Virus record (IMG/VR): IMGVR_UViG_3300025319_000005
Span: 62,001 to 126,000 of that record
DNA length: 64,000 nt
Direction: 5' to 3' (one strand)
The notes beneath the pieces are model-generated. The model did not search any database. It was not told the origin of the DNA and worked only from the letters and a program-made list of their open reading frames with translations. Made by a program: the position numbers and the translations under genes. This document shows positions 4,858-31,764 of this stretch, one piece after another (within the stretch, counting starts at the first letter, position 1; every line of letters begins with the position of its first letter).

Positions 4858-4939
4858 GATATACGTAAAATCCAATTCAATTTTTGTCACAAACTTAATT
4901 CTTTTTGTGACAGAATTTCAGATTTATGTTTCGTATATC
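4858..4939. repeat. Nested palindromic element copy 1
   Basis: GATATACG..TGTCAC-N16-GTGACA..CGTATATC. Confidence 0.95.
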
Positions 4940-5071
4940 CAAATAAAAATTAAATCCTACTTTAGGAGCCCTGGGAAATTCTGAAGCTCCGGTGCTTCAG
5001 AATCAGGATTTTACGCAAACAAAAAGCCCAGGAATTTTCCCGGGCTTCGTGTGAAATGTAAAAATATATCT

Positions 5072-5458
5072 TTAATCAATGCACAAATATCCTTTAAGAT
5101 TTACTGCTGGACAAAACATTAGCAACTCATCAATTGCTGTAACATCGCCACTTGCACATTGCTCTTTAATGAGTTCTAAACATTCGTCAATTAATAACTG
5201 CTTGCGTTTCTTTTGCTCTTCCTGTACTTCTGCGATTGCGTTTTTCACAAGGATACAATCGAAATCAGAGGATTTTACTTCTGGATTTGTTTTTCCTATA
5301 TTTGAAATAATTTCACCGTCAATAGTAATTGTAGCAATTACTCTTGCATTTTCAGAGTTCGGGTTGGTATCGGGATAACAGTCAATTGAAATTTCTCCTG
5401 TTTCTTCATTAGTATAATCTGTTATTACCTCTGCAAAAATTTGGATTTTGTTTTTCAT
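5072..5458 (-). CDS. hypothetical protein
   Basis: ATG overlaps upstream stop. Confidence 0.7.
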   Translation of the reverse strand: MKNKIQIFAEVITDYTNEETGEISIDCYPDTNPNSENARVIATITIDGEIISNIGKTNPEVKSSDFDCILVKNAIAEVQEEQKKRKQLLIDECLELIKEQCASGDVTAIDELLMFCPAVNLKGYLCID

Positions 5459-5778
5459 TATATTTGTTTTGGGTTTATAGTAAATTTCCAATGCAACAAT
5501 TGTTTCTTTCCAACCTCATAGTAAATTTCCAGTATAGCAATTGCTTCTTTCCAACCTCCTTTATATTTGTGTTGTTTTATACCTTGCTCAACAAATTTTT
5601 CAAGTATATTTGATGACTGTTCTAAAAGAAGTGGTGTTTCTGCAACAATAACTTCCCACGTAAATGCTTTTTTCCCTGCTCTAAAACTAAACTTCTCCCC
5701 ATTAAGCGTTTCATAAACATGAATTTCTTTTGGACCGGGGTTTAATACTTCTTTAAGTGTGAGAGTTAGTTTTGCCAT
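5458..5778 (-). CDS. hypothetical protein
   Basis: Motif upstream. Confidence 0.75.
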   Translation of the reverse strand: MAKLTLTLKEVLNPGPKEIHVYETLNGEKFSFRAGKKAFTWEVIVAETPLLLEQSSNILEKFVEQGIKQHKYKGGWKEAIAILEIYYEVGKKQLLHWKFTINPKQI

Positions 5779-5828
5779 GATGTTTCGTTTTGGTTATAAT
5801 GTACTATACAAGAAATAATTGGATTGCG

Positions 5829-6029
5829 TTACACCTCTTCGTTTTCTTGTATATTTATATCATCTGCATCAATGCCAGAGCTTAAAATTTGTGCGCCTAA
5901 ACAACTCGGTTCATTCTGCAGAGCTAAATTAATTAGGTCAATTGCAGTTAGAGCATCTGCTACCATGTTTCCATGAATTCTAGGTATGTCTACTTGTATT
6001 GTCAGGTTTTTGATTGTGATTGTTTTCAT
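5829..6029 (-). CDS. hypothetical protein
   Basis: Motif upstream; stop in TGTAAC. Confidence 0.7.
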   Translation of the reverse strand: MKTITIKNLTIQVDIPRIHGNMVADALTAIDLINLALQNEPSCLGAQILSSGIDADDINIQENEEV

Positions 6030-6089
6030 AAGCTATGTTTTTTTGGTTTATAATGCACTATACAAGATTTAATTTAATGGCGTTACAAC

Positions 6090-6530
6090 TTATTGAGAAA
6101 TCAAAGTTTGTCTGTAAGAGTTTGATATTTCATTACTCCAATGATAGGGTTCTACACATTCCTTAAAGTATTGTTCTGGAGTTAAATCTCTTGTATAAAC
6201 ATATTTAAAGAAATTTTCTTTTATAAGTTCTTTATAGCGAACATCTCTACTCTCTTTAGTTGGAAAATTTTGATAAATTCTACCGACTTTAGGAGAAATA
6301 TAACTTAACTCAAATGGAGTTTCAAAGTTTTTAATATTCATTACAAAATCAATTCCATAAGACCATTCATCTTTGGTATCAATAACGGTAAAATCCCTTT
6401 TCAACCCTTTTAAATCATTCCTGGATTTTCCTTCTATAAACAAATGCACAATAGAAATACACTCCATTCTTTTAGCTGAAAGCTCCATCGCATATTTCTC
6501 AGCATCAAGATATTTTTTAAAAGTTTTCAT
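6090..6530 (-). CDS. hypothetical protein
   Basis: Motif upstream. Confidence 0.75.
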   Translation of the reverse strand: MKTFKKYLDAEKYAMELSAKRMECISIVHLFIEGKSRNDLKGLKRDFTVIDTKDEWSYGIDFVMNIKNFETPFELSYISPKVGRIYQNFPTKESRDVRYKELIKENFFKYVYTRDLTPEQYFKECVEPYHWSNEISNSYRQTLISQ

Positions 6531-6590
6531 TTGTTTGTGTTTTGGTTATAATGTACTATACAAATTTTAATTTAAGGGCGTTACAATTTT

Positions 6591-7208
6591 TCAGTTTTTT
6601 TCTATCTCTTTCAACATTTCAACTTCTTCTGTTTCAAGTTGAGCGTATTCGTTTAATTTATTTGTGTGTTCAGTTGCAAGTTTTTCGATTACCTTTTCTT
6701 TATCAATTTTCAATTTTTTTATACAAGTGAGTACTTCTATTTGAACTTCACGTTTGTTTTTGGAAATATTTACTTTATCACCATGAACAGCACCCCAAAC
6801 ATTTTTACCAACTTCTTCTTGAATTGATATTTCACAACATACTATTCCCAATATGTTTAAGTCAAACAAATTAATTTTATATACCCCTATTTTAGAATTA
6901 TGCTTTTCAAAGTAAGCAAATCTAGGTGTAATCTTTGTAATTACGTCCGACCATACTTTATGAGAATAAACACTGGAGAACCAAAACACATCACCAACTT
7001 TAACATCAGATTTTATTCGTGTATCAACAAAATAGGATTTGTCAGCTTGAATGTAAATTCCCATTAGTTTGGGATGTTTAACTGTATAAACATTTTCAAA
7101 AGTGTGAATTTCTACTTCTACCTCCGTTCCTTTCTCAATTGGACAGACAGCGTGCGACCATTTAGGACATTTTAGGCTCTTTGCTAATATTAGTTTCTTC
7201 GTTTCCAT
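6591..7208 (-). CDS. hypothetical protein
   Basis: Motif upstream. Confidence 0.75.
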   Translation of the reverse strand: METKKLILAKSLKCPKWSHAVCPIEKGTEVEVEIHTFENVYTVKHPKLMGIYIQADKSYFVDTRIKSDVKVGDVFWFSSVYSHKVWSDVITKITPRFAYFEKHNSKIGVYKINLFDLNILGIVCCEISIQEEVGKNVWGAVHGDKVNISKNKREVQIEVLTCIKKLKIDKEKVIEKLATEHTNKLNEYAQLETEEVEMLKEIEKN

Positions 7209-7509
7209 AGAAAATTCTGTTTTTATTGGTTTGTAATGTACTATACCAAAAATTAAATTGCCGTGTTACACTTTTAAATTGATATTCTCAGCTATTAAAA
7301 ATAGGCTTTCGTCTATTAAAAATCAGTTTTTAACTATTTTATTAAATTGTTAATAATATCCAGCCTACTTTTACAGTGAATGTCAAATATGATACAGATC
7401 ACCAAAATTAGTGATAAACATCACTTAGTTTTAAGAAACAGATAAATAACTCTATCGTTTAATTTTATATAAACTGAACCGTCAGAAACGGCAACTTAAA
7501 AAACAGATT

Positions 7510-7827
7510 ATGGAAACAAATTATGTCAACGTTGAAAATTTGGATTTAAAAAACTTAACATCAAAAGAGCTTTTTCTATACACTTTAAATAAAATTGGCA
7601 GACCTTCACTAGCAAGGGATATGGCTGAATATTTGGAAAGAAATAAATTAATTTCAATGAAAAAAGAGGAAATATTAATCAGATTATATACTGGTGCGAC
7701 ACAATTAAACAAATCAAAAGTAGTTAGTAGGATGCCCTATGATGGCAGAATGTATATGTATGCTATCATAAAACAACAACAATTTGTTAATTTGACAGCT
7801 CAGAATAAATTTAAAATGGTTGCATAA
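7510..7827 (+). CDS. putative winged-helix DNA-binding protein, paralog 1
   Basis: Shares DL-x-x-LT-x-x-E-x-FL...IG-x-P...RDM...Y with next two ORFs; basic; fold is inference. Confidence 0.6.
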   Translation: METNYVNVENLDLKNLTSKELFLYTLNKIGRPSLARDMAEYLERNKLISMKKEEILIRLYTGATQLNKSKVVSRMPYDGRMYMYAIIKQQQFVNLTAQNKFKMVA

Positions 7828-7975
7828 CAAATAAATGTGTGAATTATATAACACAAAAATAAAATTGTGTAATAGCTACATGTTCATAAATTGCAACCTT
7901 TGTTGCGTTAAAAAGTATAAACAATAAAGATTTTAACTGTACCGACAGAATCGGCAATTTAAAAACAAAAACAAA

Positions 7976-8377
7976 ATGAATACAATTAGCAAAAAAAAGG
8001 TTAAGGTTAAAGTTCCAACTCCTTCGGCAAAAGCCGTAAAGTCAAAAACTAAAGAAGAAAAAACAACGAAAAAAGCGATAGAAGAAAAAACAAAAGATGT
8101 TGATTTGAATAATTTAACAGCAGATGAAATCTTTTTACAGACCCTAAAAGAGATAGGCGCACCTTCTCGCGTTAGAGATATGGTTGCTTTACTTAAAAAG
8201 AATAAACGAGTTTCAATAGCAAAGAAAAAATTGTTGATAAAATTTTATGCCAGTGCATCACACTTAAATCGAGATGGTGTAGTAAAAAGAACCCCGGTAA
8301 ATGGAAGTATGTATGCTTACAGTCTTTTGGGCTGGAAGAAAAATAAAACCAAAGCTAAACTATCTGTGGCTGCATAA
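7976..8377 (+). CDS. putative winged-helix DNA-binding protein, paralog 2, Lys-rich N-tail
   Basis: As above. Confidence 0.6.
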   Translation: MNTISKKKVKVKVPTPSAKAVKSKTKEEKTTKKAIEEKTKDVDLNNLTADEIFLQTLKEIGAPSRVRDMVALLKKNKRVSIAKKKLLIKFYASASHLNRDGVVKRTPVNGSMYAYSLLGWKKNKTKAKLSVAA

Positions 8378-8398
8378 CACACGTTTATTTTTGTATTA

Positions 8399-8445
8399 AA
8401 GGGAGAGAATATAGACCAAAAATCCTATTCTCTCCCTTATTTTTT
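8399..8445. terminator. Bidirectional terminator between convergent paralogs
   Basis: aagggagagaata...tattctctccctt. Confidence 0.75.
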
Positions 8446-8452
8446 GGGAATA

Positions 8453-8803
8453 TTATGCAACCTTTTTCTCTTTTGCTTTACCAAATTTCCAACCAGACAT
8501 ACCATAAACAAACATACTTTTATTTACTGGCTCTCTTTTTACGAATCCTACCTTATTCAAAAGAGAAGCACTGGCATAGAGTTTTATCAAAAGTTTAGCT
8601 TCTTCTGTTTTTAGTGATTCATCCTTTTTGAGCTCCTTAACCATATCCCTCACAATAGCCGGTTTTCCAATTTGCTTTAAAGCGTGTAAAAACAATTCGT
8701 CTGCCGTTAATGTGTTTAAATCAATAGCCTTTGCTTTCCTTGCTTGTGCTTTTAAAGCTGAAGTATTTAATACTTTAACTTTACCAATGCTTTGAGTTTC
8801 CAT
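8453..8803 (-). CDS. putative winged-helix DNA-binding protein, paralog 3
   Basis: As above; array motif upstream. Confidence 0.6.
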   Translation of the reverse strand: METQSIGKVKVLNTSALKAQARKAKAIDLNTLTADELFLHALKQIGKPAIVRDMVKELKKDESLKTEEAKLLIKLYASASLLNKVGFVKREPVNKSMFVYGMSGWKFGKAKEKKVA

Positions 8804-8880
8804 TTTGTTTGATTTTTTAGATTAATTTATAATGCACTATACAAAAAATACTGGAGAGGTGTTACAAAAAGGGAGAATTA

Positions 8881-9201
8881 TTACCATTTCTTTTTTCCAT
8901 TGCGACCTTTAGGGGATGGCCAGGGATTATTCTCCCTTAATAAATCAACATTTATAAGTTCATTAAGACGATAATTTCTTATTGGTATTGGCTCTCTATC
9001 AAATACTGTGGATTTTATCTTTACTTCTTCCGGCAAATCCTTTATATCAATGCCAGTCTTTTTTGACAATTCTTCTATTGAGTCAATAATGATTATCTCC
9101 CCAGCTTCTATCAATTTTTCTGCAATCCTTTGAGCTTCTTCTCCAACCAGACCCATTCCAATTACAATTATCTTTGCTTTATTTTTCTTTTTAGAGTTCA
9201 T
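8881..9201 (-). CDS. hypothetical protein
   Basis: Operon with 9198-9416. Confidence 0.65.
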   Translation of the reverse strand: MNSKKKNKAKIIVIGMGLVGEEAQRIAEKLIEAGEIIIIDSIEELSKKTGIDIKDLPEEVKIKSTVFDREPIPIRNYRLNELINVDLLRENNPWPSPKGRNGKKKW

Positions 9202-9416
9202 GTTGTTTTATTTTCTATTAATTTATATGCTCCAGAATCTAATCCATGTTGAAATTGTTTAACCGAAGTCCAAGCCATACTCATTGTGTTTCTCCCTAAA
9301 TTATGTGTAGGAACGTTCCAGCTAATCCTTTTTTCAGTTACTTTTACAACTTCAAACTCTTTTCCGGTTGGAGTGAATAAAAATATTGTTCCAATCTTTA
9401 CATCTGTTGCTTTCAT
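9198..9416 (-). CDS. hypothetical protein (likely leaderless)
   Basis: ATG directly follows motif. Confidence 0.7.
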   Translation of the reverse strand: MKATDVKIGTIFLFTPTGKEFEVVKVTEKRISWNVPTHNLGRNTMSMAWTSVKQFQHGLDSGAYKLIENKTT

Positions 9417-9454
9417 ATTGTACTATACAATAAACAATTGAATTATGTTACAAA

Positions 9455-10003
9455 TTATGAGGGGAGAACATCAGGAAAAACAACTGTATGACTTGCTATA
9501 TAAATTCCTTTTGTAATATCAGATAGTTTATCAGCCACTCTTTCTTTTCCTTCTGCTGTTAATAAGTCAGTAAAAAGTATGCCGTTTAAATGATCAATCT
9601 CATGAGAGAAAACCACTGCATCAAATCCTCTTAATCTAAGTTTCTGTTTATTGAAATCAATATCATAAAATTCGACATCAATTATCTCGTTTCTAACAAA
9701 CACATCTTCATAGACACCAGCAATACTTAAACAGCCCTCGTGTGATTTTTGAATTCCTCTTTGTTTTTTTATAATTGGATTAACAACAACAATCTCTTTA
9801 TTGCCCATTTTCATTACAAACACACGACTATTAACATTTAGTTGTGGACTTGCTAATCCTACTGCTGTACCTATACTTTTCATTGTAAAAAGCATATCAT
9901 TAGCCAAAGTTTTAATCTCTGGAGTATTTTCAGCTTCAATACATACTTCCCGAAGCATTTTAGAGCCGTAGCCAATGATGGGTAGGATTTTATTTTCTTC
10001 CAT
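9455..10003 (-). CDS. def: peptide deformylase
   Basis: VGLASPQ, EGCLS and HEIDH motifs. Confidence 0.95.
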   Translation of the reverse strand: MEENKILPIIGYGSKMLREVCIEAENTPEIKTLANDMLFTMKSIGTAVGLASPQLNVNSRVFVMKMGNKEIVVVNPIIKKQRGIQKSHEGCLSIAGVYEDVFVRNEIIDVEFYDIDFNKQKLRLRGFDAVVFSHEIDHLNGILFTDLLTAEGKERVADKLSDITKGIYIASHTVVFPDVLPS

Positions 10004-10178
10004 ATTTTAACATATTTGTTAATTGAGCCATTTCATCTTCTGATAGAAAATTATAATCAGTAATCCCGTTAAGTTCTCTATCTAAATAGATTTTGCGTTT
10101 CAAGTTATCAACAAACCACTTAAAGCCATTTATATTTACCTCTATAAGTCTTTTCTTTATTTGTTCTTTTTCTGTCAT
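9990..10178 (-). CDS. hypothetical protein (likely leaderless)
   Basis: ATG directly follows motif. Confidence 0.7.
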   Translation of the reverse strand: MTEKEQIKKRLIEVNINGFKWFVDNLKRKIYLDRELNGITDYNFLSEDEMAQLTNMLKYGRK

Positions 10179-10291
10179 ATTGTACTATACAATAAATTAA
10201 AACACTACGTTACAATTTTTAAACTTGAGGCCACCGGGATTAAATCCGGGCCAGCCAGGAGGCTCCCAATACCCATTTTTTTAATTTTTTA

Positions 10292-10372
10292 GATATACGA
10301 TTAATCAAAGTCAATTTATGTCACAAAGATAAATAATTTGTGACAGAAATACAGTTTTATATTTCATATATC
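10292..10372. repeat. Nested palindromic element copy 2
   Basis: Same architecture, CATATATC variant. Confidence 0.9.
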
Positions 10373-10638
10373 TACAAGTCAAAAAAACAGGCTTTTTCTT
10401 GCTGCTGGTTAGCCGCCATTCTGCTGCTTTTTTCTGGTTTTTTAACCAGTTGAAATTCTAATTTATCAATGTTTATAGCACTTACAGAGCTTTGTTTAGC
10501 CGCTGGTTCCTGGAAATCCTGAAGTTGGCGAGTTCTAAAAAAGAAAACCCCGGAGAATGTCCGAGGTTATTAGTGTTGATGTTAAAAAATAAAATCCACC
10601 AAACGGAAGAGCCGAAGGTGGATTTTACTTTATAATCG

Positions 10639-10735
10639 TGGAAACAAAAGGACTCGAACCTATACATCTACTTTTTCAGGGTAGCACTCTACCGAACTTT
10701 TGACAGCTCTCCTTTCGGAGTTGAGTTACATTTCC
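10639..10735 (-). tRNA. tRNA-Phe(GAA)-like gene with enlarged D-loop (possibly pseudo)
   Basis: Acceptor GGAAATG/TGTTTCC, D stem ACTC/GAGT enclosing extra CTCC-GAAA-GGAG hairpin, loop CTGAAAA, T loop TTCGAGT; mismatches in anticodon and T stems. Confidence 0.6.
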
Positions 10736-10789
10736 TTGTTACATTATAAAACGAATATGTTTTATAATTGTTTCACAAAACTAAAAAAA

Positions 10790-11023
10790 TTATTCTACTA
10801 TTCCAAGTTTATTTAAAAAATTATTTGCGTATTCTACTGCATTTTTAATAGATGCTTGATGGTCATCCTTGAAATCATAAGCAACGGCATCAATAGCAGA
10901 ATGTATTTCATTCATTAATTCACACATCGCTTTTAAATTCTCTAATCTTTTAGCATCCACTTCTGATTTCCCAACTGGTCTAATTTCACCAATTAGCTTT
11001 TTTACTACATCGTAATTTGTCAT
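10790..11023 (-). CDS. hypothetical protein between two tRNA-like genes
   Basis: ORF track. Confidence 0.7.
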   Translation of the reverse strand: MTNYDVVKKLIGEIRPVGKSEVDAKRLENLKAMCELMNEIHSAIDAVAYDFKDDHQASIKNAVEYANNFLNKLGIVE

Positions 11024-11045
11024 CGTTTTATGTTTTGAGTTTTAG

Positions 11046-11119
11046 TGGAAGAAATTGGATTTGAACCAATGGCACAAACGTTTTCGGCGTTTTGCTCTAC
11101 CAGACTGAGCTACCCTTCC
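11046..11119 (-). tRNA. tRNA-Phe(GAA), non-canonical C33
   Basis: GGAAGGG TA GCTC AGTCTGGTA GAGC A AAACG CCGAAAA CGTTT GTGCC ATTGG TTCAAAT CCAAT TTCTTCC A; starts just after a promoter motif. Confidence 0.85.
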
Positions 11120-11156
11120 AGTTATAATGTACTATACAAAAAGAATTATTGCTACG

Positions 11157-11411
11157 TTACAAAAGTGCGATTTTTATGCTTGTTTGTAGGTCTTTAAGGA
11201 ATTTTGTTTCATCTTCCATTTCAGCGCCACCAAATTCAATATTACGTTGAATGGCTCTTTCTGTGAATTTGCCCATTTGGAACGCTTCTAATGGAGTTAA
11301 ATCTTTTGGTGATGTTTCTGCTTTAGTACAGACTTTTTGCCAAGTTTGTGTTTGAAGTGTATTTAATTCACCGCTGAAGGTAAATAATGGTCTTATGATT
11401 TCAAATAGCAT
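11157..11411 (-). CDS. hypothetical protein
   Basis: Motif upstream; stop in TGTAAC. Confidence 0.7.
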   Translation of the reverse strand: MLFEIIRPLFTFSGELNTLQTQTWQKVCTKAETSPKDLTPLEAFQMGKFTERAIQRNIEFGGAEMEDETKFLKDLQTSIKIALL

Positions 11412-11476
11412 GAGATATGTTTTTTAGTTATAATGTACTATACAAATTAAAATCGAGTTGCGTTACAAAAAATGTT

Positions 11477-11749
11477 TTATCTAATTTCTTCAGAAATACG
11501 TTCTGCTTCTGCAAGTGTCCAAATGTTATCTTCCATTGCTTTCTCCCTTTTAAATAAAGTAAAACCCCAGACTCCATTTGTATTGTATTTAATCTCGATA
11601 CCATTCTTAGTAGAAATATGACGATAGGATATTTTCCCTTCTTTTACTTTAAATGGTTCATTAGAGCCAATTTGTTGAAACAATCTCCCTTTAGCATCAG
11701 CAAGGAATGTTACATCACCTTTTTTCTCTATAAAATTAAGTCCTTCCAT
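11477..11749 (-). CDS. hypothetical protein
   Basis: Operon. Confidence 0.7.
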   Translation of the reverse strand: MEGLNFIEKKGDVTFLADAKGRLFQQIGSNEPFKVKEGKISYRHISTKNGIEIKYNTNGVWGFTLFKREKAMEDNIWTLAEAERISEEIR

Positions 11750-11755
11750 TTTGTT

Positions 11756-12298
11756 TTATTTTAAATCATTTCTAAATACCAATACATTCGCTTGAAGTAC
11801 AGAACTATACACTAAAGCCTTTTTAGCATATTTCTTTGGCTCTTCGATTAATTCAACACAATCAACAATCCGAGTTCCTTCATGTTGACTAACTCTGTAA
11901 GTATCAATAGCGTATTCTTGCTTTACGTTTTTCAAAAACTCTTTAACTTTTTCGTCTATTTCTTTTTCATTTAATTCACTTATTTTCAAGTAAGTTAAAT
12001 TTTCAAAAAATTCTCCCTCTCTGCCTGCTATTAACCAATCAGCCATTTCTTGTAAGTGAGAAGGCAAAATATCATCTTCATTTTCAAAATCAAACAGGGA
12101 AGAATTTGAGCTATCATTAACCATTTTCTCAAAGGCATAAGCATAATCCTTTTTTAAAAATCTTCCATTTAAGCGTTCCCTGTAACATTGTCCAACCAGA
12201 TGCTCCCCATTATGCCAAATAATTGCTACACCGCCATCTTCTGCTAATAAAGTGCCATCGCTTCCACCTTCGTTTATATATAAGAATTTGTTTTCCAT
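11756..12298 (-). CDS. hypothetical protein (likely leaderless)
   Basis: ATG directly follows motif. Confidence 0.75.
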   Translation of the reverse strand: MENKFLYINEGGSDGTLLAEDGGVAIIWHNGEHLVGQCYRERLNGRFLKKDYAYAFEKMVNDSSNSSLFDFENEDDILPSHLQEMADWLIAGREGEFFENLTYLKISELNEKEIDEKVKEFLKNVKQEYAIDTYRVSQHEGTRIVDCVELIEEPKKYAKKALVYSSVLQANVLVFRNDLK

Positions 12299-12329
12299 AA
12301 TGCACTATACAAGTTTTAATTTAACTGCG

Positions 12330-12644
12330 TTACAAAAAAGAACAATTGGATAGAAATTCTTTTTGCTTATCAGTAAGTTCTCCAACAAATTCATATTCAA
12401 TTTCATCGCAAGTAAAAACCTTGCCTTCTATTACTGTTGTAGTTGTTTTTACAATAATAAGTTCAGCTCCAAGTAGCCGTTCAAATCCCATTCCCGAATC
12501 CAAAGAACCGTCAAGTCCTTTTGTTGCCTGTTTGATTATTTCATCTTTGGTTTTTCCAGTTAATTTTGTTGCTGGATATGCTCCAGTACCTCCACCCCAA
12601 AGATTTCCTAATACTGTTCCTGTCGATTTAAATGAAGTTTTCAT
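12330..12644 (-). CDS. Gly-rich hypothetical protein
   Basis: Start reassigned downstream of motif; stop in TGTAAC. Confidence 0.7.
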   Translation of the reverse strand: MKTSFKSTGTVLGNLWGGGTGAYPATKLTGKTKDEIIKQATKGLDGSLDSGMGFERLLGAELIIVKTTTTVIEGKVFTCDEIEYEFVGELTDKQKEFLSNCSFL

Positions 12645-12710
12645 GGTGTTTGTTTTTGGTTTATAACGCACTATACAAAAAAGAATTTAATTGCGTTACA
12701 TTAACTAATA

Positions 12711-12962: not shown

Positions 12963-13020
12963 GGCTGTTTTTATTTAAGTTATAATGTACTATACAAATT
13001 TTAATTTGATTGTGTTACAA

Positions 13021-13230: not shown

Positions 13231-13362
13231 AACGTTTGTTTTTGGTTGTAATGTACTATACGAATTTAAAACATATCGCGTTACAAAAACATAAAATAAC
13301 AGGCGGATGTTTCTGGAGAAGCCCGTCGCCGGCGAGTTCTGGAGCTATTTTTGATTTTAAAA

Positions 13363-13444
13363 GATATACGTAAAATCCAACTCAATTTTTGTCACAAACT
13401 TAATTCTTTTCGTGACACAATTTCAGATTTATATTTCGTATATC
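13363..13444. repeat. Nested palindromic element copy 3
   Basis: Same architecture. Confidence 0.95.
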
Positions 13445-13534: not shown

Positions 13535-13565
13535 AAAAGCCCCAACATTTCTGCCGGGGCTTTTC
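13535..13565 (-). terminator. Conserved intrinsic terminator family ending each array block
   Basis: AAAGCCCCGGCAGAAATGTTGGGGCTTTTGTTTT on minus strand; related copies near 5022, 10543, 16060, 18360, 21505, 23370, 25207, 25960, 27405, 29420. Confidence 0.85.
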
Positions 13566-15734: not shown

Positions 15735-15839
15735 AATGTACTATACAAAAAAGAATTTAATCGCGTTACAGAAATATTAGAATAGTTGGCGGATGTTTCT
15801 GGAGGAGAAGCCCGTCCAGTAAGGATTTAAACAGATTTT

Positions 15840-15921
15840 GATATACGTAAAATCCAATTAAATTCCTGTCACGAAAAGAATTTAATTAGTGACAGGATTT
15901 CGGATTTATATTTCGTATATC
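15840..15921. repeat. Nested palindromic element copy 4
   Basis: Same architecture; central spacer in reverse orientation. Confidence 0.95.
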
Positions 15922-15960: not shown

Positions 15961-16050
15961 GGGATTTTTCGGGATTTTTCGGGATTTGTCAGGATTCGTC
16001 GGGATTTTTCGGGATTCGTCGGGATTTTACGGGATTCATCAGGATTTTAC
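15961..16050. repeat. Tandem 10-bp repeat x9 (consensus GGGATTTTTC)
   Basis: gggatttttc gggatttttc gggatttgtc aggattcgtc gggatttttc gggattcgtc gggattttac gggattcatc aggattttac. Confidence 0.95.
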
Positions 16051-16287
16051 CAAAAACAAAAAAGCCACACATTTCTGCATGGCTCTTTAAATAAAATTTG
16101 CTCAACTTATAACTACGCTTGATTCCCCTTAATTGTTGTGACTCGTTCGGGTATTGTATCTGGTTTCAATGCGTTTATATTTATTTGTGTATCTGTTGCT
16201 TGGATAAATTCTTTTTTAAGGTCAGCCCAAAATCCAATTCTTTCAATTTCTAACATAATATGTTTTTTTAAATAAATATGATTGATT

Positions 16288-18006: not shown

Positions 18007-18185
18007 AATGTACTGCCGTTAGGCGTATGTTATTTATAACGTACTATACGAAAAAGAATTGAGCCATGTTACACGTTACGGGTGCGTTTAGGATTTTACA
18101 ACAATTAATTGCATCTAACGGATGGCGGATATACGCAGTTTTGCAGCGTTTTGCAGCGAAAATTTAAGTGATTTTAAAACTAAAA

Positions 18186-18267
18186 GATATACGTAAAATC
18201 CAATTCAATTTGTGTCACGAATTTAATTCTTTTCGTGACATAATCTCATTTTTATATTTCGTATATC
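18186..18267. repeat. Nested palindromic element copy 5
   Basis: Same architecture. Confidence 0.95.
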
Positions 18268-18632
18268 AAAATCAAAGTAAAATTCCACTGCGGAGCCTCC
18301 AGGAAATCTAAAGTTCCGGTGCTTCAGAACTTTGGGCATCAGGATTTTACCACAAAACAAAAACCCCAACATTTCTGCCGGGGCTTTTTTATTAATCTTT
18401 TATCTAATATATAAGTAATCATTATTATAAATTACCTCTTGGGGGCATCTCTTGTCCGATTCATCTCGTCTGAGTTTAAGGGTTAATACTAATTAACGCG
18501 AATAATGTGTTTAGCTACCAATTCAGCTACAATTACGCTGTTTATTTTTTGTATTGCTTGGTCTATTGTAAGTCCTAAAAGCAACCATTGTTTTAAGTCC
18601 ATGTGATTTAATATTAAAGTTAACGTTTGAGT

Positions 18633-21212: not shown

Positions 21213-21336
21213 AATGTACTATACAAGAAAAAAACGAATTTCGTTACAACTTCGTTGGGTTACACCACAAATATCCGTGCATAAAAACTGGGACTCCAGC
21301 CGGCGTACATCTCTGGCGTAAAAATCCTAAATATTT

Positions 21337-21418
21337 GATATACGTAAAATCCAATTCAATTTCTGTCACGAATTAATTTATTTTTGTGACAGGATTTCAC
21401 TTTTATATTTCGTATATC
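21337..21418. repeat. Nested palindromic element copy 6
   Basis: Same architecture. Confidence 0.95.
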
Positions 21419-21603
21419 CTTATCCGGTAAAATCCTCTAGCTGGCCACCGCCTGGGGAATTTTTTTCAAGCTCTTACTTTGGGCATCAGGATTTTACACA
21501 AAACAAAAAGCCCCAACATTTCTGTTGAGGCCTTTGTCAATAAGTTCACTCCGTATTACTCCGCAGTGCCTATTCGAGGAAAATGGTGCGCCATATCCCT
21601 ATA

Positions 21604-23042: not shown

Positions 23043-23173
23043 AGTTTTAAATTATTGGTTATTGTACTATACAAATATAAATAGTATTACGTTACGAAAA
23101 ATCAGAATAACATGGCGGATGTTTCTGGAGAAGCCCGTCGCCGGCGAGTTCTGGAGCTATTTTTGATTTATTA

Positions 23174-23255
23174 GATATACGTTTAATCAAAGCCAATTTG
23201 TGTCACGAAAAGAATTTAATTAGTGACAGGATTTCGGGTTTAAATTTCGTATATC
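23174..23255. repeat. Nested palindromic element copy 7
   Basis: Same architecture; alternative left arm, reversed central spacer. Confidence 0.95.
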
Positions 23256-23424
23256 TAAATTAAAAGAAAAATCCTGTTCTGGAGCCTCCTGGCCGGATTT
23301 CCTTCAGCTTCAGTTTCTTGCGGTGAATGGGTTAGTTTAACTCCGCAAAAGTGCGTCGAACAGAAAACAAAAAACCCCCGCATTTCTGCAAAGGGCTTTC
23401 TGAACCAACCAATAAATTAAAAAG

Positions 23425-24059: not shown

Positions 24060-24881
24060 TTAGATAAGTGTTTTAAGATACAAAACAAAAGCGTTCATAT
24101 CTACCTCATTTGCGTTTTCAAATTTATCATTTATTGAATGGCAAAGACTCCATGTATAACAAAAACCTCTTGTTATTACATTGTTCATACACACATCATT
24201 TAAAGAACCAATACAAATGCTTGGAAGTCCATTTTTTTCAAAAGTATTTGAATCACTTGGCGGTATTCTAACCCTACGGATTTCGGGCTTATCAATCATA
24301 TTTGACATTCTATAACCCATCCAATAATTTTGCCCATTTGCCGTGAGTTCTAACACAAATATTTTATTCACATTTCCATATTTGTTTTCTAATATTTGTT
24401 TAGCTATTTTTGTTGCACCCGATGTTGTTAAACTCACTCTTTCTTCCGAATCGTTAAAACATATTACTACATTGTTTGCTGGTTTTTCTTTTGATAATTG
24501 AATACATAAATCCAAGAGATTACATACACTCGCACTGTTATCTTGACATGATTCACTATTTATATTTGCAACGTCATGGTGTGCCGTAAATATAGTAGTT
24601 ATTTCTTTATTATGTCCTTCAATCTCAACTACAATATTAACTTCGGCAGGCAATCCTTCAACAAAGTCAGGAACGTCCAAAATCGGTTGATACATACTAA
24701 CAATAAATTTTATATCATTAATTTCAAGTTGGTGCATAATATACTGCACTCTATTTGTAATTGGGTTTAAGTTATTTGTGAAAGCATTAAAGTCTGCATT
24801 GAACGCACATAACTCACGGAGCATTTCATACCCATTCTTAATTTTTATCGGCTTTTCTATTTTCTCTGTATCTGTGTCCAT
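24060..24881 (-). CDS. M28-family Zn metallopeptidase-like protein
   Basis: TAHHD, QDNSASV, DSEE, SDS and late CHS-x-x-D motifs. Confidence 0.85.
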   Translation of the reverse strand: MDTDTEKIEKPIKIKNGYEMLRELCAFNADFNAFTNNLNPITNRVQYIMHQLEINDIKFIVSMYQPILDVPDFVEGLPAEVNIVVEIEGHNKEITTIFTAHHDVANINSESCQDNSASVCNLLDLCIQLSKEKPANNVVICFNDSEERVSLTTSGATKIAKQILENKYGNVNKIFVLELTANGQNYWMGYRMSNMIDKPEIRRVRIPPSDSNTFEKNGLPSICIGSLNDVCMNNVITRGFCYTWSLCHSINDKFENANEVDMNAFVLYLKTLI

Positions 24882-25011
24882 AATGTACTATACGAAATAT
24901 AATTTATATTTGTTACAAAGTTAATATTAAATAATTGCAAATGAAACAGTTAAAACAAAACGAGAACTACTGGAGAAGCTCCGTCGAGCTGGTTCTAAAT
25001 TATTTATTCGA

Positions 25012-25093
25012 GATATACGTAAAATCCAACTCAATTTGTGTCACGAATTAAATTATTTTCGTGACAGGATTTCGCTTTTATATTTCGTATATC
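25012..25093. repeat. Nested palindromic element copy 8
   Basis: Same architecture. Confidence 0.95.
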
Positions 25094-25257
25094 CTTATCT
25101 GGTAAAAATCCACGAGCTGGACGCCTGGCCAGGAATTTCCTTCAGCTCCTCCGGGGTAAACTATATTTTGGCACCAGTTTCAATCTGCTGTCGAATTATA
25201 GAAAACAAAAAACCCCTGCATTTCTGCAAGGGCTTCTCGTACCAACCAACCAATAAT

Positions 25258-25488: not shown

Positions 25489-25757
25489 AGTTACATTTGT
25501 TTTTCAGTACTTACAATAACGGAATTTCCATCTTCTTTACAAAGTAGTGTTCCTTCAATTTGAACATTAACACAACCTTTTTCAGATAGTTGTTCTAATT
25601 CAAAAATTAGTTTGTTTATGTTTATCGTTTCCATTGTGTTTAATTGTTGGTTATAATGTACTATACCAAAAATAAAATTACTGCGTTACAATAATATATC
25701 CCGTGCATAAAACTGGGACTCCAGCCGGCGAGCTCTGGTGTAAAATCCTAAATTTAT

Positions 25758-25839
25758 AATATACACTTAATCAAACTCAATTTGTGTCACAAAATAAATT
25801 CTTTTCGTGACAAACTATCACTTTTAGTTTGCGTATATC
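25758..25839. repeat. Nested palindromic element copy 9
   Basis: Same architecture, AATATACA variant. Confidence 0.9.
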
Positions 25840-26009
25840 TCCCTAAGGTAAAATACACCACCGGCCAGCCTGCTGAGCCCAGGAATTTTTCAGGAATAGG
25901 CATCAGGATTTCATTTTGGCTTTAAGTGGGTCAAAAACATGAGTTATGGCCAAAAACAAAAAACCCCTGCATTTCTGCAAGGGCTTTCTGAACCGAACCA
26001 ACCAATGTA

Positions 26010-27104: not shown

Positions 27105-27248
27105 AACGATTGGTTTATTTGGTTAATGTACTATACGATATTAAATCATATCGCGTTACAACTTCGTTGACTATACCACAAATATTCTATGCAGGAAAAC
27201 TGGGACTCCAGCCGGCGTGAGGCTCTGGCGTAAAATCCTGAAGTATTT

Positions 27249-27331
27249 GATATACGATTAATCAAAGTCAATTTGTGTCACAAATTTAAATTCTTTTTGT
27301 GACAGGAAATCAATTGGATTTTACGTATATC
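27249..27331. repeat. Nested palindromic element copy 10
   Basis: Right arm is reverse complement of the usual left arm. Confidence 0.95.
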
Positions 27332-27554
27332 TTTTCAAAGTAAAATCCACCGCCGGCCAGCCGCTGAGCCCAGGGATTTTTCCTCCGGGGGAGAGAATCC
27401 CAAAAACAAAAACCCTCACATTTCTGCGAGGGCTTTCCAAACCAACCAATTGGTATAGGGCAATACATTACTGCAAGACTACAAACCCCTATCTTTGAGT
27501 GAAAACATCTACACGTAGCTATGCAAATTCATGTTTTCATACTATCTTAAATAT

Positions 27555-27737: not shown

Positions 27738-27741
27738 TATT

Positions 27742-29149: not shown

Positions 29150-29269
29150 ATCTTTATAGTTGTTGGTTATTGTACTATACGAAAAAGAATTGAATCATGT
29201 TACAAGGGAGAACACACCGTGCGAGAAAACTGGAGTACCAGATCGCCGAGGGTGAGCCTGAGAATTTAA

Positions 29270-29351
29270 GATATACGCTTAATCAATACCAATTTGTGTC
29301 ACTAATTAAATTATTTTCGTGACAGGATTTTAGGTTTAAATTTCGTATATT
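29270..29351. repeat. Nested palindromic element copy 11
   Basis: Same architecture. Confidence 0.9.
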
Positions 29352-29475
29352 AATATGCGATGCACTCCGGGGAGAGTCGCCTCTGAGGTGGAGCTATTTT
29401 TTTCGGATTTGTAGAAAACAAAAAAGGCAACCCGATTTTCGGATTGCCTTTTGTTTTGCATAAGGGAGAGAGTGA

Positions 29476-30063: not shown

Positions 30064-30181
30064 GTTTTCTAAGTTTAGTTGGTTTCTATATTGTACTATA
30101 CGAAAAAAAATATATCCATGTTACAAAACTGAAAAAGTTTTTATCGACCGAAAAATCCTGGAAATCTGTGCTTTTCTTTAT

Positions 30182-30264
30182 AATATACGTAAAATCCAAC
30201 TCATTTCCTGTCACTAATTTTAATTATTTTCGTGACAGAATATTAGATTTATGTTTCGTATATC
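30182..30264. repeat. Nested palindromic element copy 12 (at divergence point)
   Basis: Same architecture, between divergent promoters. Confidence 0.9.
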
Positions 30265-30492
30265 TACAAGTCAAAAAAAACGTGATCTGGGACTCTGTGG
30301 ACCCCTGAAAAAACTCCTGAGCCGACATCTAAAATCCTTTGAAACGCTTGCTATCATTGAGAATTTTCTTCCAGTCAGGACCTGGATGCCTTCCGTATAA
30401 ATTTTGACTCAAGAACTCAAAACAAGTGGTAAAATCCTCCATTTGTATCCCGAAAATAATTTATTTTTATTTGTTGTATAACTCACTGAAAG

Positions 30493-30528
30493 TGTAACGC
30501 AGTAGTTTATCATTTCGTATAGTACATT
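30493..30528 (+). promoter_or_regulatory. Plus-strand copy of the TGTAAC-N17-CGTATAG motif
   Basis: tgtaac gcagtagtttatcattt cgtatagtacatt upstream of ORF 30546; further + copies at 30916-30951 and 31323-31358. Confidence 0.85.
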
Positions 30529-30545
30529 AACCAATAACAAGTACC

Positions 30546-30872
30546 ATGAATTTATTGAATGTAATTTATTCAAAAAACACCTACAAAAAAGCAATCTGTA
30601 AAGGTTGTAGCAATAAACTAATTGAAGGCAGTACAATTCTTTCGATAGTACGTACACAAGGTCGTTTTACATCGGTCAGCAACTATTGTCAAAAATGTGC
30701 AGAAAAAGAACTGCAGGATGCTTTGAATGAAGTTTTACCATTGGCACAACGAATAATAAAAATCCAAGAAACATTGGATAATGACTTAATAATGGCAAAA
30801 AAGATTGAAGGGATAGCAAAGGAAGCTATGGAAAAATATGATACCACTATGAAAAAATTGGGTAACGAGTAA
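30546..30872 (+). CDS. Zn-finger/coiled-coil protein
   Basis: CKGC...CQKC; + strand motif upstream. Confidence 0.75.
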   Translation: MNLLNVIYSKNTYKKAICKGCSNKLIEGSTILSIVRTQGRFTSVSNYCQKCAEKELQDALNEVLPLAQRIIKIQETLDNDLIMAKKIEGIAKEAMEKYDTTMKKLGNE

Positions 30873-30951
30873 TCAACATACGAAAGTTCATAACTTTAAT
30901 GAAATTTTATAAATCTGTAACATAGTTCTTTTTAAATTTGTATAGCACAAT

Positions 30952-31314
30952 ATGGAAACAAAGACATTAGATAACCTAAAAGACTTACATTCAAAATTGG
31001 AAGTTGTTTTTAAAGCCGAAAATGAAGCTATAAAGACAAAACAAAAAGATGTGTTAAGTGAACAACTTAAATTACAAGTCAATTTAATATATGACTTTGT
31101 AAAAGAAAACAACTTAATACTTGTTGAATTAAACACTGCTTGGGTGGAAAAAAATGAAGCTCGTAGAACTATATATAACCCAAAAACTTTAGAACATAAA
31201 AGTTTTAAAAATTTATCCGATAAAGACTTTGTAAACAAATTCAATAAAGGAAAAAATAATTGTTTATTTGTACATAGCACATTTTGGGGTATGGATTATA
31301 TGTTAATAATGTAG
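30952..31314 (+). CDS. hypothetical protein (likely leaderless)
   Basis: ATG directly follows + strand motif. Confidence 0.75.
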   Translation: METKTLDNLKDLHSKLEVVFKAENEAIKTKQKDVLSEQLKLQVNLIYDFVKENNLILVELNTAWVEKNEARRTIYNPKTLEHKSFKNLSDKDFVNKFNKGKNNCLFVHSTFWGMDYMLIM

Positions 31315-31576
31315 CTGTATTTTGTAACACCGGAATTTTATATTTTGTATAGTATATTAGAAACAAAAACTTAAAGCCATGATAATTTTATACTACTACT
31401 TTAATCCAAATCAAATAGAATTTCTTAACCTCAAAAACCTAAACACCATGAAACAACAACTCGCAGTAATCGCAAACAATCTTACCAAAATGGAACGTTA
31501 CGAACAAATGGAACGCATCGCGCAGAATCTACTTGATATGGAAATCGAGTAGAATAGTTTTAAACATTGTTAGAGG

Positions 31577-31606
31577 AAAAGCACGGACATCATCCGTGCT
31601 TTTTTC
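31577..31606 (+). terminator. Intrinsic terminator of plus-strand block
   Basis: aaaagcacgga-catca-tccgtgctttttt. Confidence 0.85.
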
Positions 31607-31680
31607 GTATGCAATAAATCGAGATGGCGTAATGGCACATCCGGTCGCCGGGGCTGGAAAAGTTTTATACATTATCTTTT

Positions 31681-31764
31681 GATATACGAAAGATAAAACT
31701 AAAATCCTGTCACTAATTTTAATTATATTTCGTGACAGGAAATGAATTGGATTTTACGTATATC
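31681..31764. repeat. Nested palindromic element copy 13 (arms inverted)
   Basis: Arms reverse-complemented relative to the other copies. Confidence 0.9.

What the first reader, a model, noticed from the sequence alone, without database searches (positions are those of the whole stretch)
4858..31764. Thirteen ~82-bp nested palindromes with mix-and-match arms partition the gene array: candidate recombination or protein-loading system
Seen: each copy is GATATACG-N19-TGTCAC-N15-18-GTGACA-N19-CGTATATC, nearly fixed in length, inside GC-richer non-coding flanks, typically between a terminator and the next promoter. Three arm types recur: A (taaaatccaaYtcaatt), B (ttaatcaaagtcaattt) and C (gatttc..tttatattt). 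They combine as A-C (most), B-C (10292, 23174, 25758, 29270), B-A' (27249) and C'-A' (31681). The asymmetric centre is flipped in 15840 and 23174. Only the four boxes are symmetric, which fits a four-site protein-binding layout better than an RNA hairpin. Inference: sites for a recombinase that shuffles or inverts gene blocks, or for a protein acting on the first-injected DNA. I do not recognise this element, and no candidate recombinase lies inside the array.
Basis: partly seen in the sequence, partly recalled or inferred. Interest (0 to 1): 0.9.

Follow-up and report, generated by a model that had tools for sequence, protein, structure and literature searches.

The report
Polar palindromes bounding huge-phage gene blocks
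The thirteen 82-bp four-box palindromes are real and conserved: they form the core of a repeated terminator-palindrome-promoter cassette that splits a long array of small early-type genes of an uncultivated phage (about 0.5 Mb) into transcription units, and they look like docking sites for a DNA-binding protein, not recombinase sites.

Summary
There are 13 copies in the window where none is expected by chance, and 2 more lie just upstream. All 30 arms are exactly 19 nt long. The window is part of a phage contig (212 kb in IMG/VR, 503 kb in NCBI).

Each element sits between a strong intrinsic terminator and the first of several near-identical promoters (about 50 in 31 kb). GC-rich blocks flank it on both sides.

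The working unit is a 33-bp half-site: an outer box, a 19-nt arm and an inner box. Four related phages, with proteins 34-62% identical, carry the same outer box at orthologous positions. Their inner boxes or spacings differ, and some of their sites are single half-sites.

The arms are polar: type C faces the terminator and types A or B face the promoter. I found no RNA covariation, no Rfam match and no target-site duplications.

Gene order is the same in 48 near-identical contigs, apart from one microhomology deletion. The only recombinase in the window is an IS607 transposase.

Best reading: a protein-binding boundary or operator module inside a cassette like the PeSL cassettes of T4-type phages (confidence about 0.45). 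Site-specific recombination is unlikely. The function is untested and no binding protein has been shown.

The parts
4858..4939 (.). Element 1. Arms A (promoter side) and C (terminator side); centre 16 nt.
10292..10372 (.). Element 2. Arms B-C; centre 15 nt; right outer box reads CATATATC.
13363..13444 (.). Element 3. Arms A-C; centre 16 nt.
15840..15921 (.). Element 4. Arms A-C; centre flipped. Its A arm is one end of the natural 11.8-kb deletion.
18186..18267 (.). Element 5. Arms A-C; centre 16 nt.
21337..21418 (.). Element 6. Arms A-C.
23174..23255 (.). Element 7. Arms B-C; centre flipped.
25012..25093 (.). Element 8. Arms A-C. Lies upstream of the M28-peptidase-like gene, as does its orthologue in phage 2 (L041:1603-1693).
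25758..25839 (.). Element 9. Arms B-C (the C arm is divergent); left outer box reads AATATACA.
27249..27331 (.). Element 10. Arms B-A', so A is on the terminator side; centre 17 nt.
29270..29351 (.). Element 11. Arms B-C. Lies downstream of the 195-aa gene, as do its orthologues L040:4312-4393 and L099:1486-1556.
30182..30264 (.). Element 12. Arms A-C. Lies between divergent promoters with no terminator. Orthologues: L098:646-717 and L099:2672-2743.
31681..31764 (.). Element 13. Arms C'-A', flipped together with the direction of transcription. It is the last element before the array boundary.
5023..5048 (-). Intrinsic terminator ahead of element 1.
10546..10568 (-). Intrinsic terminator ahead of element 2.
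13535..13564 (-). Intrinsic terminator ahead of element 3, with a GAAA loop closed by CA/UG.
16059..16088 (-). Intrinsic terminator ahead of element 4.
15961..16048 (.). Tandem array, 8.8 copies of GGGATTTTTC, between that terminator and element 4. The unit is related to the TAAAATCC motif.
18359..18388 (-). Intrinsic terminator ahead of element 5.
21506..21535 (-). Intrinsic terminator ahead of element 6.
23375..23394 (-). Intrinsic terminator ahead of element 7.
25205..25240 (-). Intrinsic terminator ahead of element 8.
25957..25990 (-). Intrinsic terminator ahead of element 9.
27408..27437 (-). Intrinsic terminator ahead of element 10.
29422..29452 (-). Intrinsic terminator ahead of element 11.
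31581..31606 (+). Hairpin plus T run that ends the three plus-strand genes ahead of element 13.
   Evidence: read from the sequence
4771..4802 (-). First promoter after element 1 (GTAAC-N18-GTATAGTAC), 55 nt from the outer box.
10182..10213 (-). First promoter after element 2 (78 nt).
13253..13284 (-). First promoter after element 3 (78 nt).
15738..15769 (-). First promoter after element 4 (70 nt). The ATG follows directly, so the transcript looks leaderless.
18041..18072 (-). First promoter after element 5 (113 nt).
21216..21247 (-). First promoter after element 6 (89 nt).
23064..23095 (-). First promoter after element 7 (78 nt).
24885..24916 (-). First promoter after element 8 (95 nt).
25658..25689 (-). 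First promoter after element 9 (68 nt).
27128..27159 (-). First promoter after element 10 (89 nt).
29172..29203 (-). First promoter after element 11 (66 nt).
30093..30124 (-). Leftward promoter next to element 12 (57 nt).
30494..30525 (+). Rightward promoter on the other side of element 12. It drives the zf-PARP-like 108-aa gene.

Best explanation
Each element is the AT-rich core of a boundary cassette of about 300-350 bp. Read along the direction of transcription, the cassette runs: intrinsic terminator, GC-rich block, palindrome, GC-rich block, first promoter of the next unit. The cassettes cut an array of at least 45 kb of small, individually promoted, early-type genes into transcription units. 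The host genome is an uncultivated phage with a contig of about 0.5 Mb.

The working unit is a 33-bp bipartite half-site: outer box GATATACG, a 19-nt arm, and inner box TGTCAC. An element is two such half-sites placed head to head.

Inferred, not shown: each half-site is bound along its length by a sequence-specific DNA-binding protein, probably phage-encoded. This may be the same factor that reads the array promoter. The inner box differs by one base from the promoter's upstream box TGTAAC, and the outer box shares GTATA with its downstream box.

Bound just after a terminator and ahead of the first promoter, such a complex would act in one or both of two ways. It could be a boundary, that is, a roadblock or insulator against read-through and antisense polymerases. 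It could also be an operator that sets or shuts off the first promoter of each unit.

Shown: the anatomy, the conservation, the polarity of the arms, and the modular half-sites. Inferred: that a protein binds, and what the binding does.
For: Position
- Terminators and elements pair one to one.
- About 50 copies of one promoter lie in 31 kb, but only the first promoter after a terminator has an element upstream.

Half-site as the unit
- All 30 arms are exactly 19 nt, and the boxes are nearly invariant.
- The arms are not complementary. Five box cells are unpaired, only one is compensatory, and no pair covaries.
- Relatives carry single half-sites with the same GC block and terminator: L040:1725, L044:120, L057:1511, L098:2286 and L100:1555. 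In two of them the inner box lies exactly 42 nt from GTAAC.

Conservation
- The outer box and the arm length are kept in four related phages with proteins 34-62% identical, at orthologous positions.
- The inner box or the spacing differs between lineages. TGTCA-N7-8-TGACA in L098 and L099 compares with N17-20 here, which is about one helical turn more.

Polarity
- Arm C faces the terminator and arm A or B faces the promoter in 13 of 15 elements. Element 31681 is flipped together with the direction of transcription.

Weaker points
- The distance from the outer box to the promoter clusters at a period of about 11 bp (p = 0.002 with all 19 distances, 0.05 with unique values).
- TGTCAC occurs nowhere else in the array: 0 seen against 9.5 expected.
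Against: - No binding protein has been identified and there are no experimental data.
- Internal promoters of identical sequence have no element, so it is unclear what the element adds.
- The GC-rich blocks and the TAAAATCC motifs are not explained by this model.
- Phage 2 uses a different inner box (TCTGCC or TCTACC), yet its array also avoids TGTCAC (1 seen, 18.9 expected). So the avoidance cannot simply be credited to the element's binder.
- The helical phasing is weak once near-duplicate flanks are collapsed.
- The resemblance to the promoter boxes does not hold for phage 2's inner box.
Confidence: 0.45

Rival explanations
1. The elements are sites for a site-specific recombinase that shuffles, inverts or excises gene blocks.
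For: - The arm combinations are mixed and some centres are flipped.
- The inner palindrome is 28 bp with a central AT. From my own memory this recalls resolvase site I, so it is only a lead.
- Gene content of the array is reshuffled between phage 1 and phage 2.
Against: - Gene order is identical in the 48 near-identical contigs read. The one exception is a deletion whose junction is a 14-nt microhomology between an arm and a promoter spacer.
- The elements are positionally orthologous in the relatives.
- The centre length ranges from 7 to 43 nt among lineages.
- Single half-sites exist.
- The only recombinase in the window is an IS607-family transposase (165.9 bits against a cut-off of 110).
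- The plus-strand genes at 7510-8377 run against the array here, while the phage 2 homologue of one of them runs with its array. No element borders that segment.
Confidence: 0.06
2. The whole cassette is a repeat of the PeSL type, kept and spread by homologous recombination and gene conversion. On this view the palindrome has no function of its own.
For: - Homology between copies extends 200-300 bp beyond the 82 bp.
- The terminators are homologous to one another.
- One natural deletion joins cassette-like sequences.
- The array is rich in ORFans and is reshuffled gene by gene between phages.
Against: - The outer box and the 19-nt arm geometry are invariant across phages that have diverged to 34-62% protein identity, while the sequence around them has changed.
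- The arms are polar.
- TGTCAC is excluded from the rest of the array.
Confidence: 0.13
3. The half-sites are outward-facing promoters of a second class. Read outwards, each is GTGACA-N19-CGTATATC. One would drive a short transcript through the GC-rich flank into the bidirectional terminator, and the other would run into the operon.
For: - GTGACA differs from the promoter box GTAACA by one base, and the outer box shares GTATA with the downstream promoter box. Scores against the promoter matrix reach the top 0.1-1% of the background.
- Most terminators have A and T runs on both sides.
- TAAAATCC and its complement often bracket the terminator-side flank.
Against: - Matrix scores are -20 to -32 bits, against more than 50 for real promoters, and the box spacing is 3 bp too long.
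- Phage 2's inner box is unlike the promoter box.
- No such half-sites occur at 32-64 kb of the window.
- The flanks have no consensus RNA structure, and the promoter-side flank folds no better than shuffles.
Confidence: 0.12
4. The element acts as RNA. For example, it could be a read-through 3' hairpin, a processing site or an antitermination site.
For: The nested stems give folding z-scores of -3.8 to -4.9.
Against: - Those scores follow from the palindromic boxes alone.
- There is no covariation and box changes are not compensated.
- Single half-sites exist in relatives.
- The element lies downstream of strong terminators.
- There is no Rfam match, even at a permissive threshold.
Confidence: 0.08
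5. The elements are structural DNA sites: programmed nicks, cruciforms, replication-start sites or condensation sites. A structure-sensing protein would read them.
For: - An AT-rich core sits between GC-rich clamps.
- Flipped centres are the mutational trace expected of hairpin extrusion (own knowledge).
- A conserved protein with a PARP-type zinc finger and a long helix is encoded between elements 12 and 13, and at the same place in all relatives.
Against: - The stems are only 6-9 and 8 bp with 19-nt mismatched arms, which is poor for a cruciform.
- Proximity of the zinc-finger gene is not evidence that it binds.
- Fifteen replication origins would be unusual.
Confidence: 0.1

Closest known systems
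PeSL cassettes (promoter-early stem-loop) in the hyperplastic regions of T4-type phages (PMC2839356, PMC4122927)
   Same: Both are small composite cassettes of a terminator and a strong early promoter. Both are repeated many times among small ORFan genes, the copies are homologous to each other, and both are linked to insertions and deletions.
   Different: Here a conserved 82-bp four-box palindrome and two GC-rich blocks lie between terminator and promoter. The promoter is not of the sigma-70 consensus type. Most promoters of the array stand alone without a cassette. Recombination between cassettes is documented only by one microhomology deletion.
Stoperators of cluster A mycobacteriophages (mentioned in PMC12266134; the details are from my own knowledge)
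   Same: Both are many dispersed intergenic sites that resemble a promoter box and are oriented with respect to transcription. Stoperators are thought to bind one phage protein that stops or silences transcription.
   Different: Stoperators are single asymmetric sites of about 13 bp bound by the immunity repressor of temperate phages. The present sites are bipartite 33-bp half-sites, mostly paired head to head, and are tied to terminators. No repressor is known here.
P1/P7 parS centromere (own knowledge)
   Same: Both are sites of about 80 bp in which two kinds of recognition box are arranged on both sides of an AT-rich centre.
   Different: parS is a single site bound by ParB together with IHF. 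No ParB-like gene was seen in the window, and here there are 15 sites inside a transcription array.
REP/BIME elements of enterobacteria (own knowledge)
   Same: Both are extragenic mosaics of inverted units of several types, placed after the 3' ends of operons.
   Different: REP units are self-complementary hairpins. The arms here are not complementary. No RAYT-type transposase is associated with the elements.
Serine-recombinase sites (res site I, hix or gix) and integron attC sites (own knowledge)
   Same: All have inverted boxes around an AT-rich centre, and attC sites also lie between gene cassettes.
   Different: The centre length is not fixed across lineages. There is no cognate recombinase and there are no rearrangements at the cores. 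The arms cannot fold in the way attC does.

Membership tests
PeSL-type regulatory cassette | A stem-loop terminator and a strong early promoter combined in one short repeated cassette. | tested here: met
   Terminators pair one to one with the elements, and a conserved promoter lies 46-124 nt beyond the element. The promoter is not sigma-70-like: a sigma-70 scan gave 105 sites against 89 expected.
PeSL-type regulatory cassette | Located in a hyperplastic region of small, variable genes. | tested here: met
   The array consists of small genes, mostly without Pfam hits. Gene content is reshuffled between phage 1 and phage 2.
PeSL-type regulatory cassette | Recombination between cassettes produces insertions, deletions and mini-circles. 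| tested here: inconclusive
   One 11.8-kb deletion was seen in two samples. Its junction is a 14-nt match between an element arm and a promoter spacer. Mini-circles cannot be tested with these tools.
Site-specific recombination site (res, hix, lox or attC) | A cognate recombinase is encoded nearby or co-occurs with the sites. | tested here: not met
   The only recombinase in the window is an IS607-family transposase at 56427-57026. The rest of the genome was not searched.
Site-specific recombination site (res, hix, lox or attC) | Rearrangement breakpoints fall at the core. | tested here: not met
   The 24 + 24 contigs read are colinear with the window. The one variant junction is not at a core.
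Site-specific recombination site (res, hix, lox or attC) | A short crossover spacer of fixed length lies between the inverted binding arms. | tested here: not met
   The centre is 15-18 nt here, 7-8 nt in L098 and L099, and 20-43 nt in phage 2.
MITE or other small transposable element | Terminal inverted repeats with target-site duplications, inserted at variable places. | tested here: not met
   The bases next to the outer boxes show no duplication. Homology between copies runs on into the flanks. The positions are orthologous among phages.
Known ncRNA family (Rfam 15) | A match to a covariance model. | tested here: not met
   Only the two tRNAs match at gathering score. Nothing matches on the cassettes at E up to 1.
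Structured RNA or DNA hairpin | Base pairs are maintained through compensatory changes. | tested here: not met
   Eight of the 14 pairs never vary, one cell is compensatory and five are unpaired. Single half-sites exist.
Stoperator-like operator array | Bound by a phage repressor that blocks transcription. | not testable with these tools
   No binder is known. The only support is resemblance: many polar intergenic sites that look like a promoter box.
parS-type centromere | A ParB-type partner protein is present. | not tested
   The window ORFs that I scanned against Pfam gave no ParB family. Most small ORFs and the rest of the genome were not scanned.

The most novel reading that the evidence does not exclude
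The elements are programmed structural DNA sites, such as site-specific nicks or extruded structures, in the early array of a huge phage. The conserved dimeric PARP-type zinc-finger protein encoded between two of them would read these sites. Together they would form a previously undescribed system that marks and insulates transcription units on the phage chromosome.
Probability: 0.07. Interest if true: 0.85.

Novelty: new variant of a known kind. Interest (0 to 1): 0.55.

Why it matters
Huge phages carry long arrays of small genes of unknown function, and how those arrays are transcribed and insulated is unknown. This work defines a conserved cis-element family with clear geometry: a bipartite 33-bp half-site, polar arms, and a fixed place between terminator and first promoter. 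It also defines the array promoter, which is present about 50 times in 31 kb.

That yields concrete probes for finding the protein that organises the array. It also gives a testable example of boundary or operator elements in a viral genome. In addition, it shows that mosaic arm patterns can arise without an active shuffling system.

Tried and rejected
- BLAST of the array and of one cassette against GenBank phages found nothing relevant, in either near or distant mode.
- Rfam gave only the tRNAs, both at gathering score and at E up to 1.
- RNAalifold on the terminator-side flanks gave no consensus structure. The promoter-side flanks fold no better than shuffles.
- A position weight matrix of the 50 array promoters shows that the elements are not copies of that promoter.
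- A C-rich, rut-like composition of the flanks is rejected, because there is no G/C skew.
- An nhmmer profile of the half-units found no copies in loci of other huge phages, or in further loci of the same phage.
- An exact-pattern scan of genome contigs gave only single half-matches in unrelated MAGs, which I took as chance. L014 is a chance match in 49% GC coding DNA.
- A scan of IMG/VR for the short-centre form gave 11 single hits, none with the array promoter, so these are chance too.
- SNP density in the elements could not be assessed, because the contigs differ too little.
- The structure model of the 195-aa protein flanked by elements 11 and 12 had a mean pLDDT of 51.6 and was not used.
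- Reading the serine recombinase at 56427-57026 as the array's recombinase is rejected: it is an IS607-type transposase.
- A literature search for the motifs and for similar cassettes in jumbo phages found no description.

Full report
**Observation.** The four-box pattern is real. A pattern search gives 22 strand-wise matches where 100 shuffles give none. Each element is 81-84 bp long. Both arms are 19 nt in all copies, and the centre is 15-18 nt. Two more copies lie just upstream of the window, at L006:4375-4455 and L007:6041-6123.

**Source.** The window is positions 62001-126000 of IMGVR_UViG_3300025319_000005, a contig of 212,632 bp. The same sequence occurs in a second JGI contig of 209,885 bp. 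It also occurs, at 100% identity, in a 503,412-bp contig of NCBI assembly GCA_902731165.1. The 50,697 GenBank phage records hold nothing similar. GC content is about 0.3. Start codons lack Shine-Dalgarno sequences and follow A/C-rich leaders. From this I infer, with low confidence, a Bacteroidota-like host.

**Anatomy.** From window 1 to about 30100, nearly all ORFs are small and lie on the minus strand; the plus-strand genes at 7510-8377 are the exception. One promoter-like motif, tTGTAACrc-N17-GTATAGTACATTATAAC, occurs about 50 times. It sits on the minus strand up to 30101 and on the plus strand at 30517, 30940 and 31347. In several cases the ATG follows directly, so those transcripts would be leaderless.

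Strong intrinsic terminators are far fewer than promoters and pair one to one with the elements. Read in the direction of transcription, each cassette runs as follows:
- gene end;
- terminator, whose GAAA-loop apex is conserved among copies;
- about 70-170 nt that include a GC-rich block;
- the element;
- 46-124 nt that include a second GC-rich block;
- the first promoter of the next unit.

GC content reaches 0.67 at 30-40 bp outside each outer box and shows no G/C skew. The motif TAAAATCC occurs 49 times against 7 expected. It is found in arm A, after the terminators, and about 18 bp outside the outer boxes. Next to element 4 a related 10-nt unit forms an 8.8-copy tandem array.

**Half-sites and polarity.** The 30 half-sites align to one pattern: GATATACG, a 19-nt arm with shared A/T positions, then TGTCAC followed by rAA. 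The arms fall into three families. In 13 of 15 elements, C faces the terminator and A or B faces the promoter. The exceptions are 27249 and L006:4375. At 31681, where transcription runs rightwards, the whole element is turned round. So the element is symmetric in its boxes but polar in its arms.

**Relatives.** A search of IMG/VR with the promoter pattern found a second phage, IMGVR_UViG_3300014205_000170, of 518,809 bp. Its contig ends overlap by 123 nt, which suggests a circular assembly. Its array proteins are 32-62% identical to those of the window.

It carries homologous elements with the same outer box, arms of 17 nt, and a different inner box (TCTGCC or TCTACC). Three are full elements with centres of 20, 29 and 43 nt. 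Four are single or degenerate half-sites, each preceded by a terminator and a GC block and pointing towards the next promoter. In two of these the inner box lies exactly 42 nt from GTAAC.

Homologues of the 108-aa protein at 30546-30872 led to three more relatives on short contigs, L098, L099 and L100. They have the same promoter. Their elements read GATATACG-N18/19-TGTCA-N7/8-TGACA-N18/19-CGTATATC, and they have single half-sites at the array boundary.

The elements sit at orthologous places:
- upstream of the M28-peptidase-like gene;
- upstream of the peptide deformylase gene;
- downstream of the 195-aa gene;
- between the divergent promoters;
- at the array boundary.

The spacing between inner boxes differs by about one helical turn between lineages.

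**RNA or DNA?** The nested stems give folding z-scores of about -4 to -5, but that follows from the boxes alone. On the 16-sequence alignment, 8 of the 14 box pairs never vary. One cell is compensatory and five are simply unpaired. The terminator-side flanks have no consensus structure, and the promoter-side flanks fold like shuffles. Rfam has no match. Single half-sites also argue against any need for a hairpin. The evidence therefore favours recognition as duplex DNA.

**Relation to the promoter.** The inner box differs by one base from the promoter's upstream box, and the outer box shares GTATA with its downstream box. Against a matrix built from the 50 promoters, the elements score only -20 to -32 bits, while real promoters score above 50. 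The best register has the boxes 3 bp too far apart. Phage 2's inner box shows no such likeness. The elements are therefore not promoters of the main class. They may still be read by a related factor.

The distance from the promoter-side outer box to GTAAC clusters at 46, 57, 68, 78, 89, 113 and 124 nt. A test for a period near 11 bp gives p = 0.002 with all 19 distances and 0.05 with unique values. This is suggestive only.

**Avoidance of the inner box.** TGTCAC occurs 26 times in the array, always inside elements. With the elements masked, 0 are seen where 9.5 are expected. Phage 2's array, which does not use this box, has 1 where 18.9 are expected. In the two arrays together it is the 7th most depleted of 1,869 hexamers. 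The six above it are five palindromes and AAAATT. At 32-64 kb of the window the depletion is mild, 4 against 6.9. I cannot explain why phage 2 avoids it as well.

**Recombination.** The 24 contigs read for the M28 gene and the 24 read for the deformylase gene are colinear with the window. The single exception is a deletion of window 4088-15855, seen in two independent datasets (L032 and L013). Its junction is a 14-nt identity between the A arm of element 4 and the spacer of an ordinary promoter at 4087. One JGI contig (L096) spans almost exactly the deleted segment.

Between phage 1 and phage 2 the backbone is colinear, with single genes moved or lost. The only recombinase in the window is an IS607-family transposase: it has a MerR-type HTH ahead of the resolvase domain and scores 165.9 bits on NF033518. 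The mixed arms and flipped centres are better read as old duplication, gene conversion and small inversions between the inverted boxes.

**Candidate binder (weak).** The 108-aa protein at 30546-30872 is encoded between elements 12 and 13. It is found in all four relatives; where the context is known, it sits next to the divergent-promoter element. Its model has a mean pLDDT of 89.5. The N-terminal part resembles PARP-1 and DNA ligase III zinc fingers bound to DNA, with Foldseek probability 0.97-1.0 and E-values of 0.03-0.3. Two of the five homologues match Pfam zf-PARP, best E = 6e-5. A long helix follows the zinc finger. In PARP-1 and ligase III such fingers sense DNA breaks (entry titles; own knowledge). 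Nothing links this protein to the elements except its position.

**Verdict.** The elements form a conserved, polar, modular family of cis-elements at the boundaries of transcription units in a huge-phage gene array. They most likely bind protein and act as boundaries or operators (confidence 0.45). The nearest described kind is the PeSL cassette of T4-type phages (PMC2839356, PMC4122927). The palindromic core goes beyond that cassette, and the papers I searched do not describe it.

Noticed in passing
window 448-31355, both strands: About 50 near-identical promoter-like motifs (tTGTAACrc-N17-GTATAGTACATTATAAC), roughly one per small gene. The ATG often follows directly, so those transcripts would be leaderless. 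The motif does not fit the sigma-70 consensus, nor (from my own knowledge) the Bacteroidota -33/-7 consensus. A phage-specific factor or polymerase is likely.
   Followed up: partly
window 1-31800, and the phage 2 array loci L057, L041, L040, L077, L044, L043, L042, L067: Short palindromes are strongly avoided: GATC (18 seen, 140 expected; 4 seen, 287 expected in phage 2), CTAG, AAGCTT, TTCGAA and ATGCAT. The non-palindromic TGTCAC is also avoided (0 of 9.5 outside the elements; 1 of 18.9 in phage 2). The TGTCAC depletion is strongest in the arrays and is unexplained.
   Followed up: partly
window 4088-15855: A natural 11.8-kb deletion variant occurs in two datasets (L032 from ENA ERZ28564304 and L013 from JGI Ga0209728). 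Its junction is a 14-nt microhomology. Contig Ga0209521_10003916 (L096) covers almost exactly the deleted segment.
   Followed up: yes
window 30546-30872 (+): A 108-aa protein with a CxxC...C/HxxC zinc finger of the PARP and DNA-ligase-III type, followed by a long helix. It is found in all four relatives; where the context is known it sits at the divergent edge of the array.
   Followed up: partly
window 31840-32320: A non-coding region of about 480 bp at the array boundary, with repeated CCTTAAT/TTAAGG and GGGCTTATTTA motifs. Similar motifs follow the last half-site in L057, L098 and L100. Its function is unknown; an origin or a packaging signal is possible.
   Followed up: partly
window 11045-11119 and 23424-23497 (-): Two tRNA-Phe(GAA) genes inside the array. 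The first lies directly behind an array promoter, and an array promoter also lies upstream of the second. Each lies in a block that ends in a terminator and a B-C element.
   Followed up: no
window 56427-57026 (-) and 54690-56426 (-); also 50086-51642 (-): An IS607-family serine transposase is followed directly by a 578-aa ORF with no family match. A separate 518-aa ORF has a weak TnpB-related zinc-ribbon hit (27 bits, below the 32-bit cut-off).
   Followed up: partly
window 41628-42749 (-): A 373-aa ORF with a thiol-activated cytolysin domain (Pfam PF01289, E = 3e-35). This is unusual for a phage. I handled it by reference only.
   Followed up: no
window 9455-10003 (-) and 24060-24881 (-): A peptide deformylase gene and an M28-peptidase-like gene lie in the array, each the first or second gene after an element. 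Both are conserved with their element in phage 2.
   Followed up: partly
window 15961-16048: A tandem array, 8.8 copies of GGGATTTTTC, lies between a terminator and element 4. The unit is related to the TAAAATCC motif, which is enriched across the array (49 seen, 7 expected).
   Followed up: partly
window 7510-8377 (+): Two plus-strand genes lie inside the minus-strand array. The phage 2 homologue of 7976-8377 runs with its array, so the segment is inverted between the two phages. No element borders it.
   Followed up: no
L024, L025, L027 (OY282444.1, Poribacteria MAG): The half-pattern matches three separate places in one bacterial chromosome. This is probably an unrelated repeat or chance. 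I did not examine it.
   Followed up: no
window 45970-47001, 49216-49902, 47664-48311, 52004-52432 (all -): Four ORFs in the non-array half of the window: a DUF7487 protein with a weak homing-endonuclease hit, a LAGLIDADG-like ORF, a Pol-beta-type nucleotidyltransferase, and a winged-helix (HTH_39) protein.
   Followed up: no
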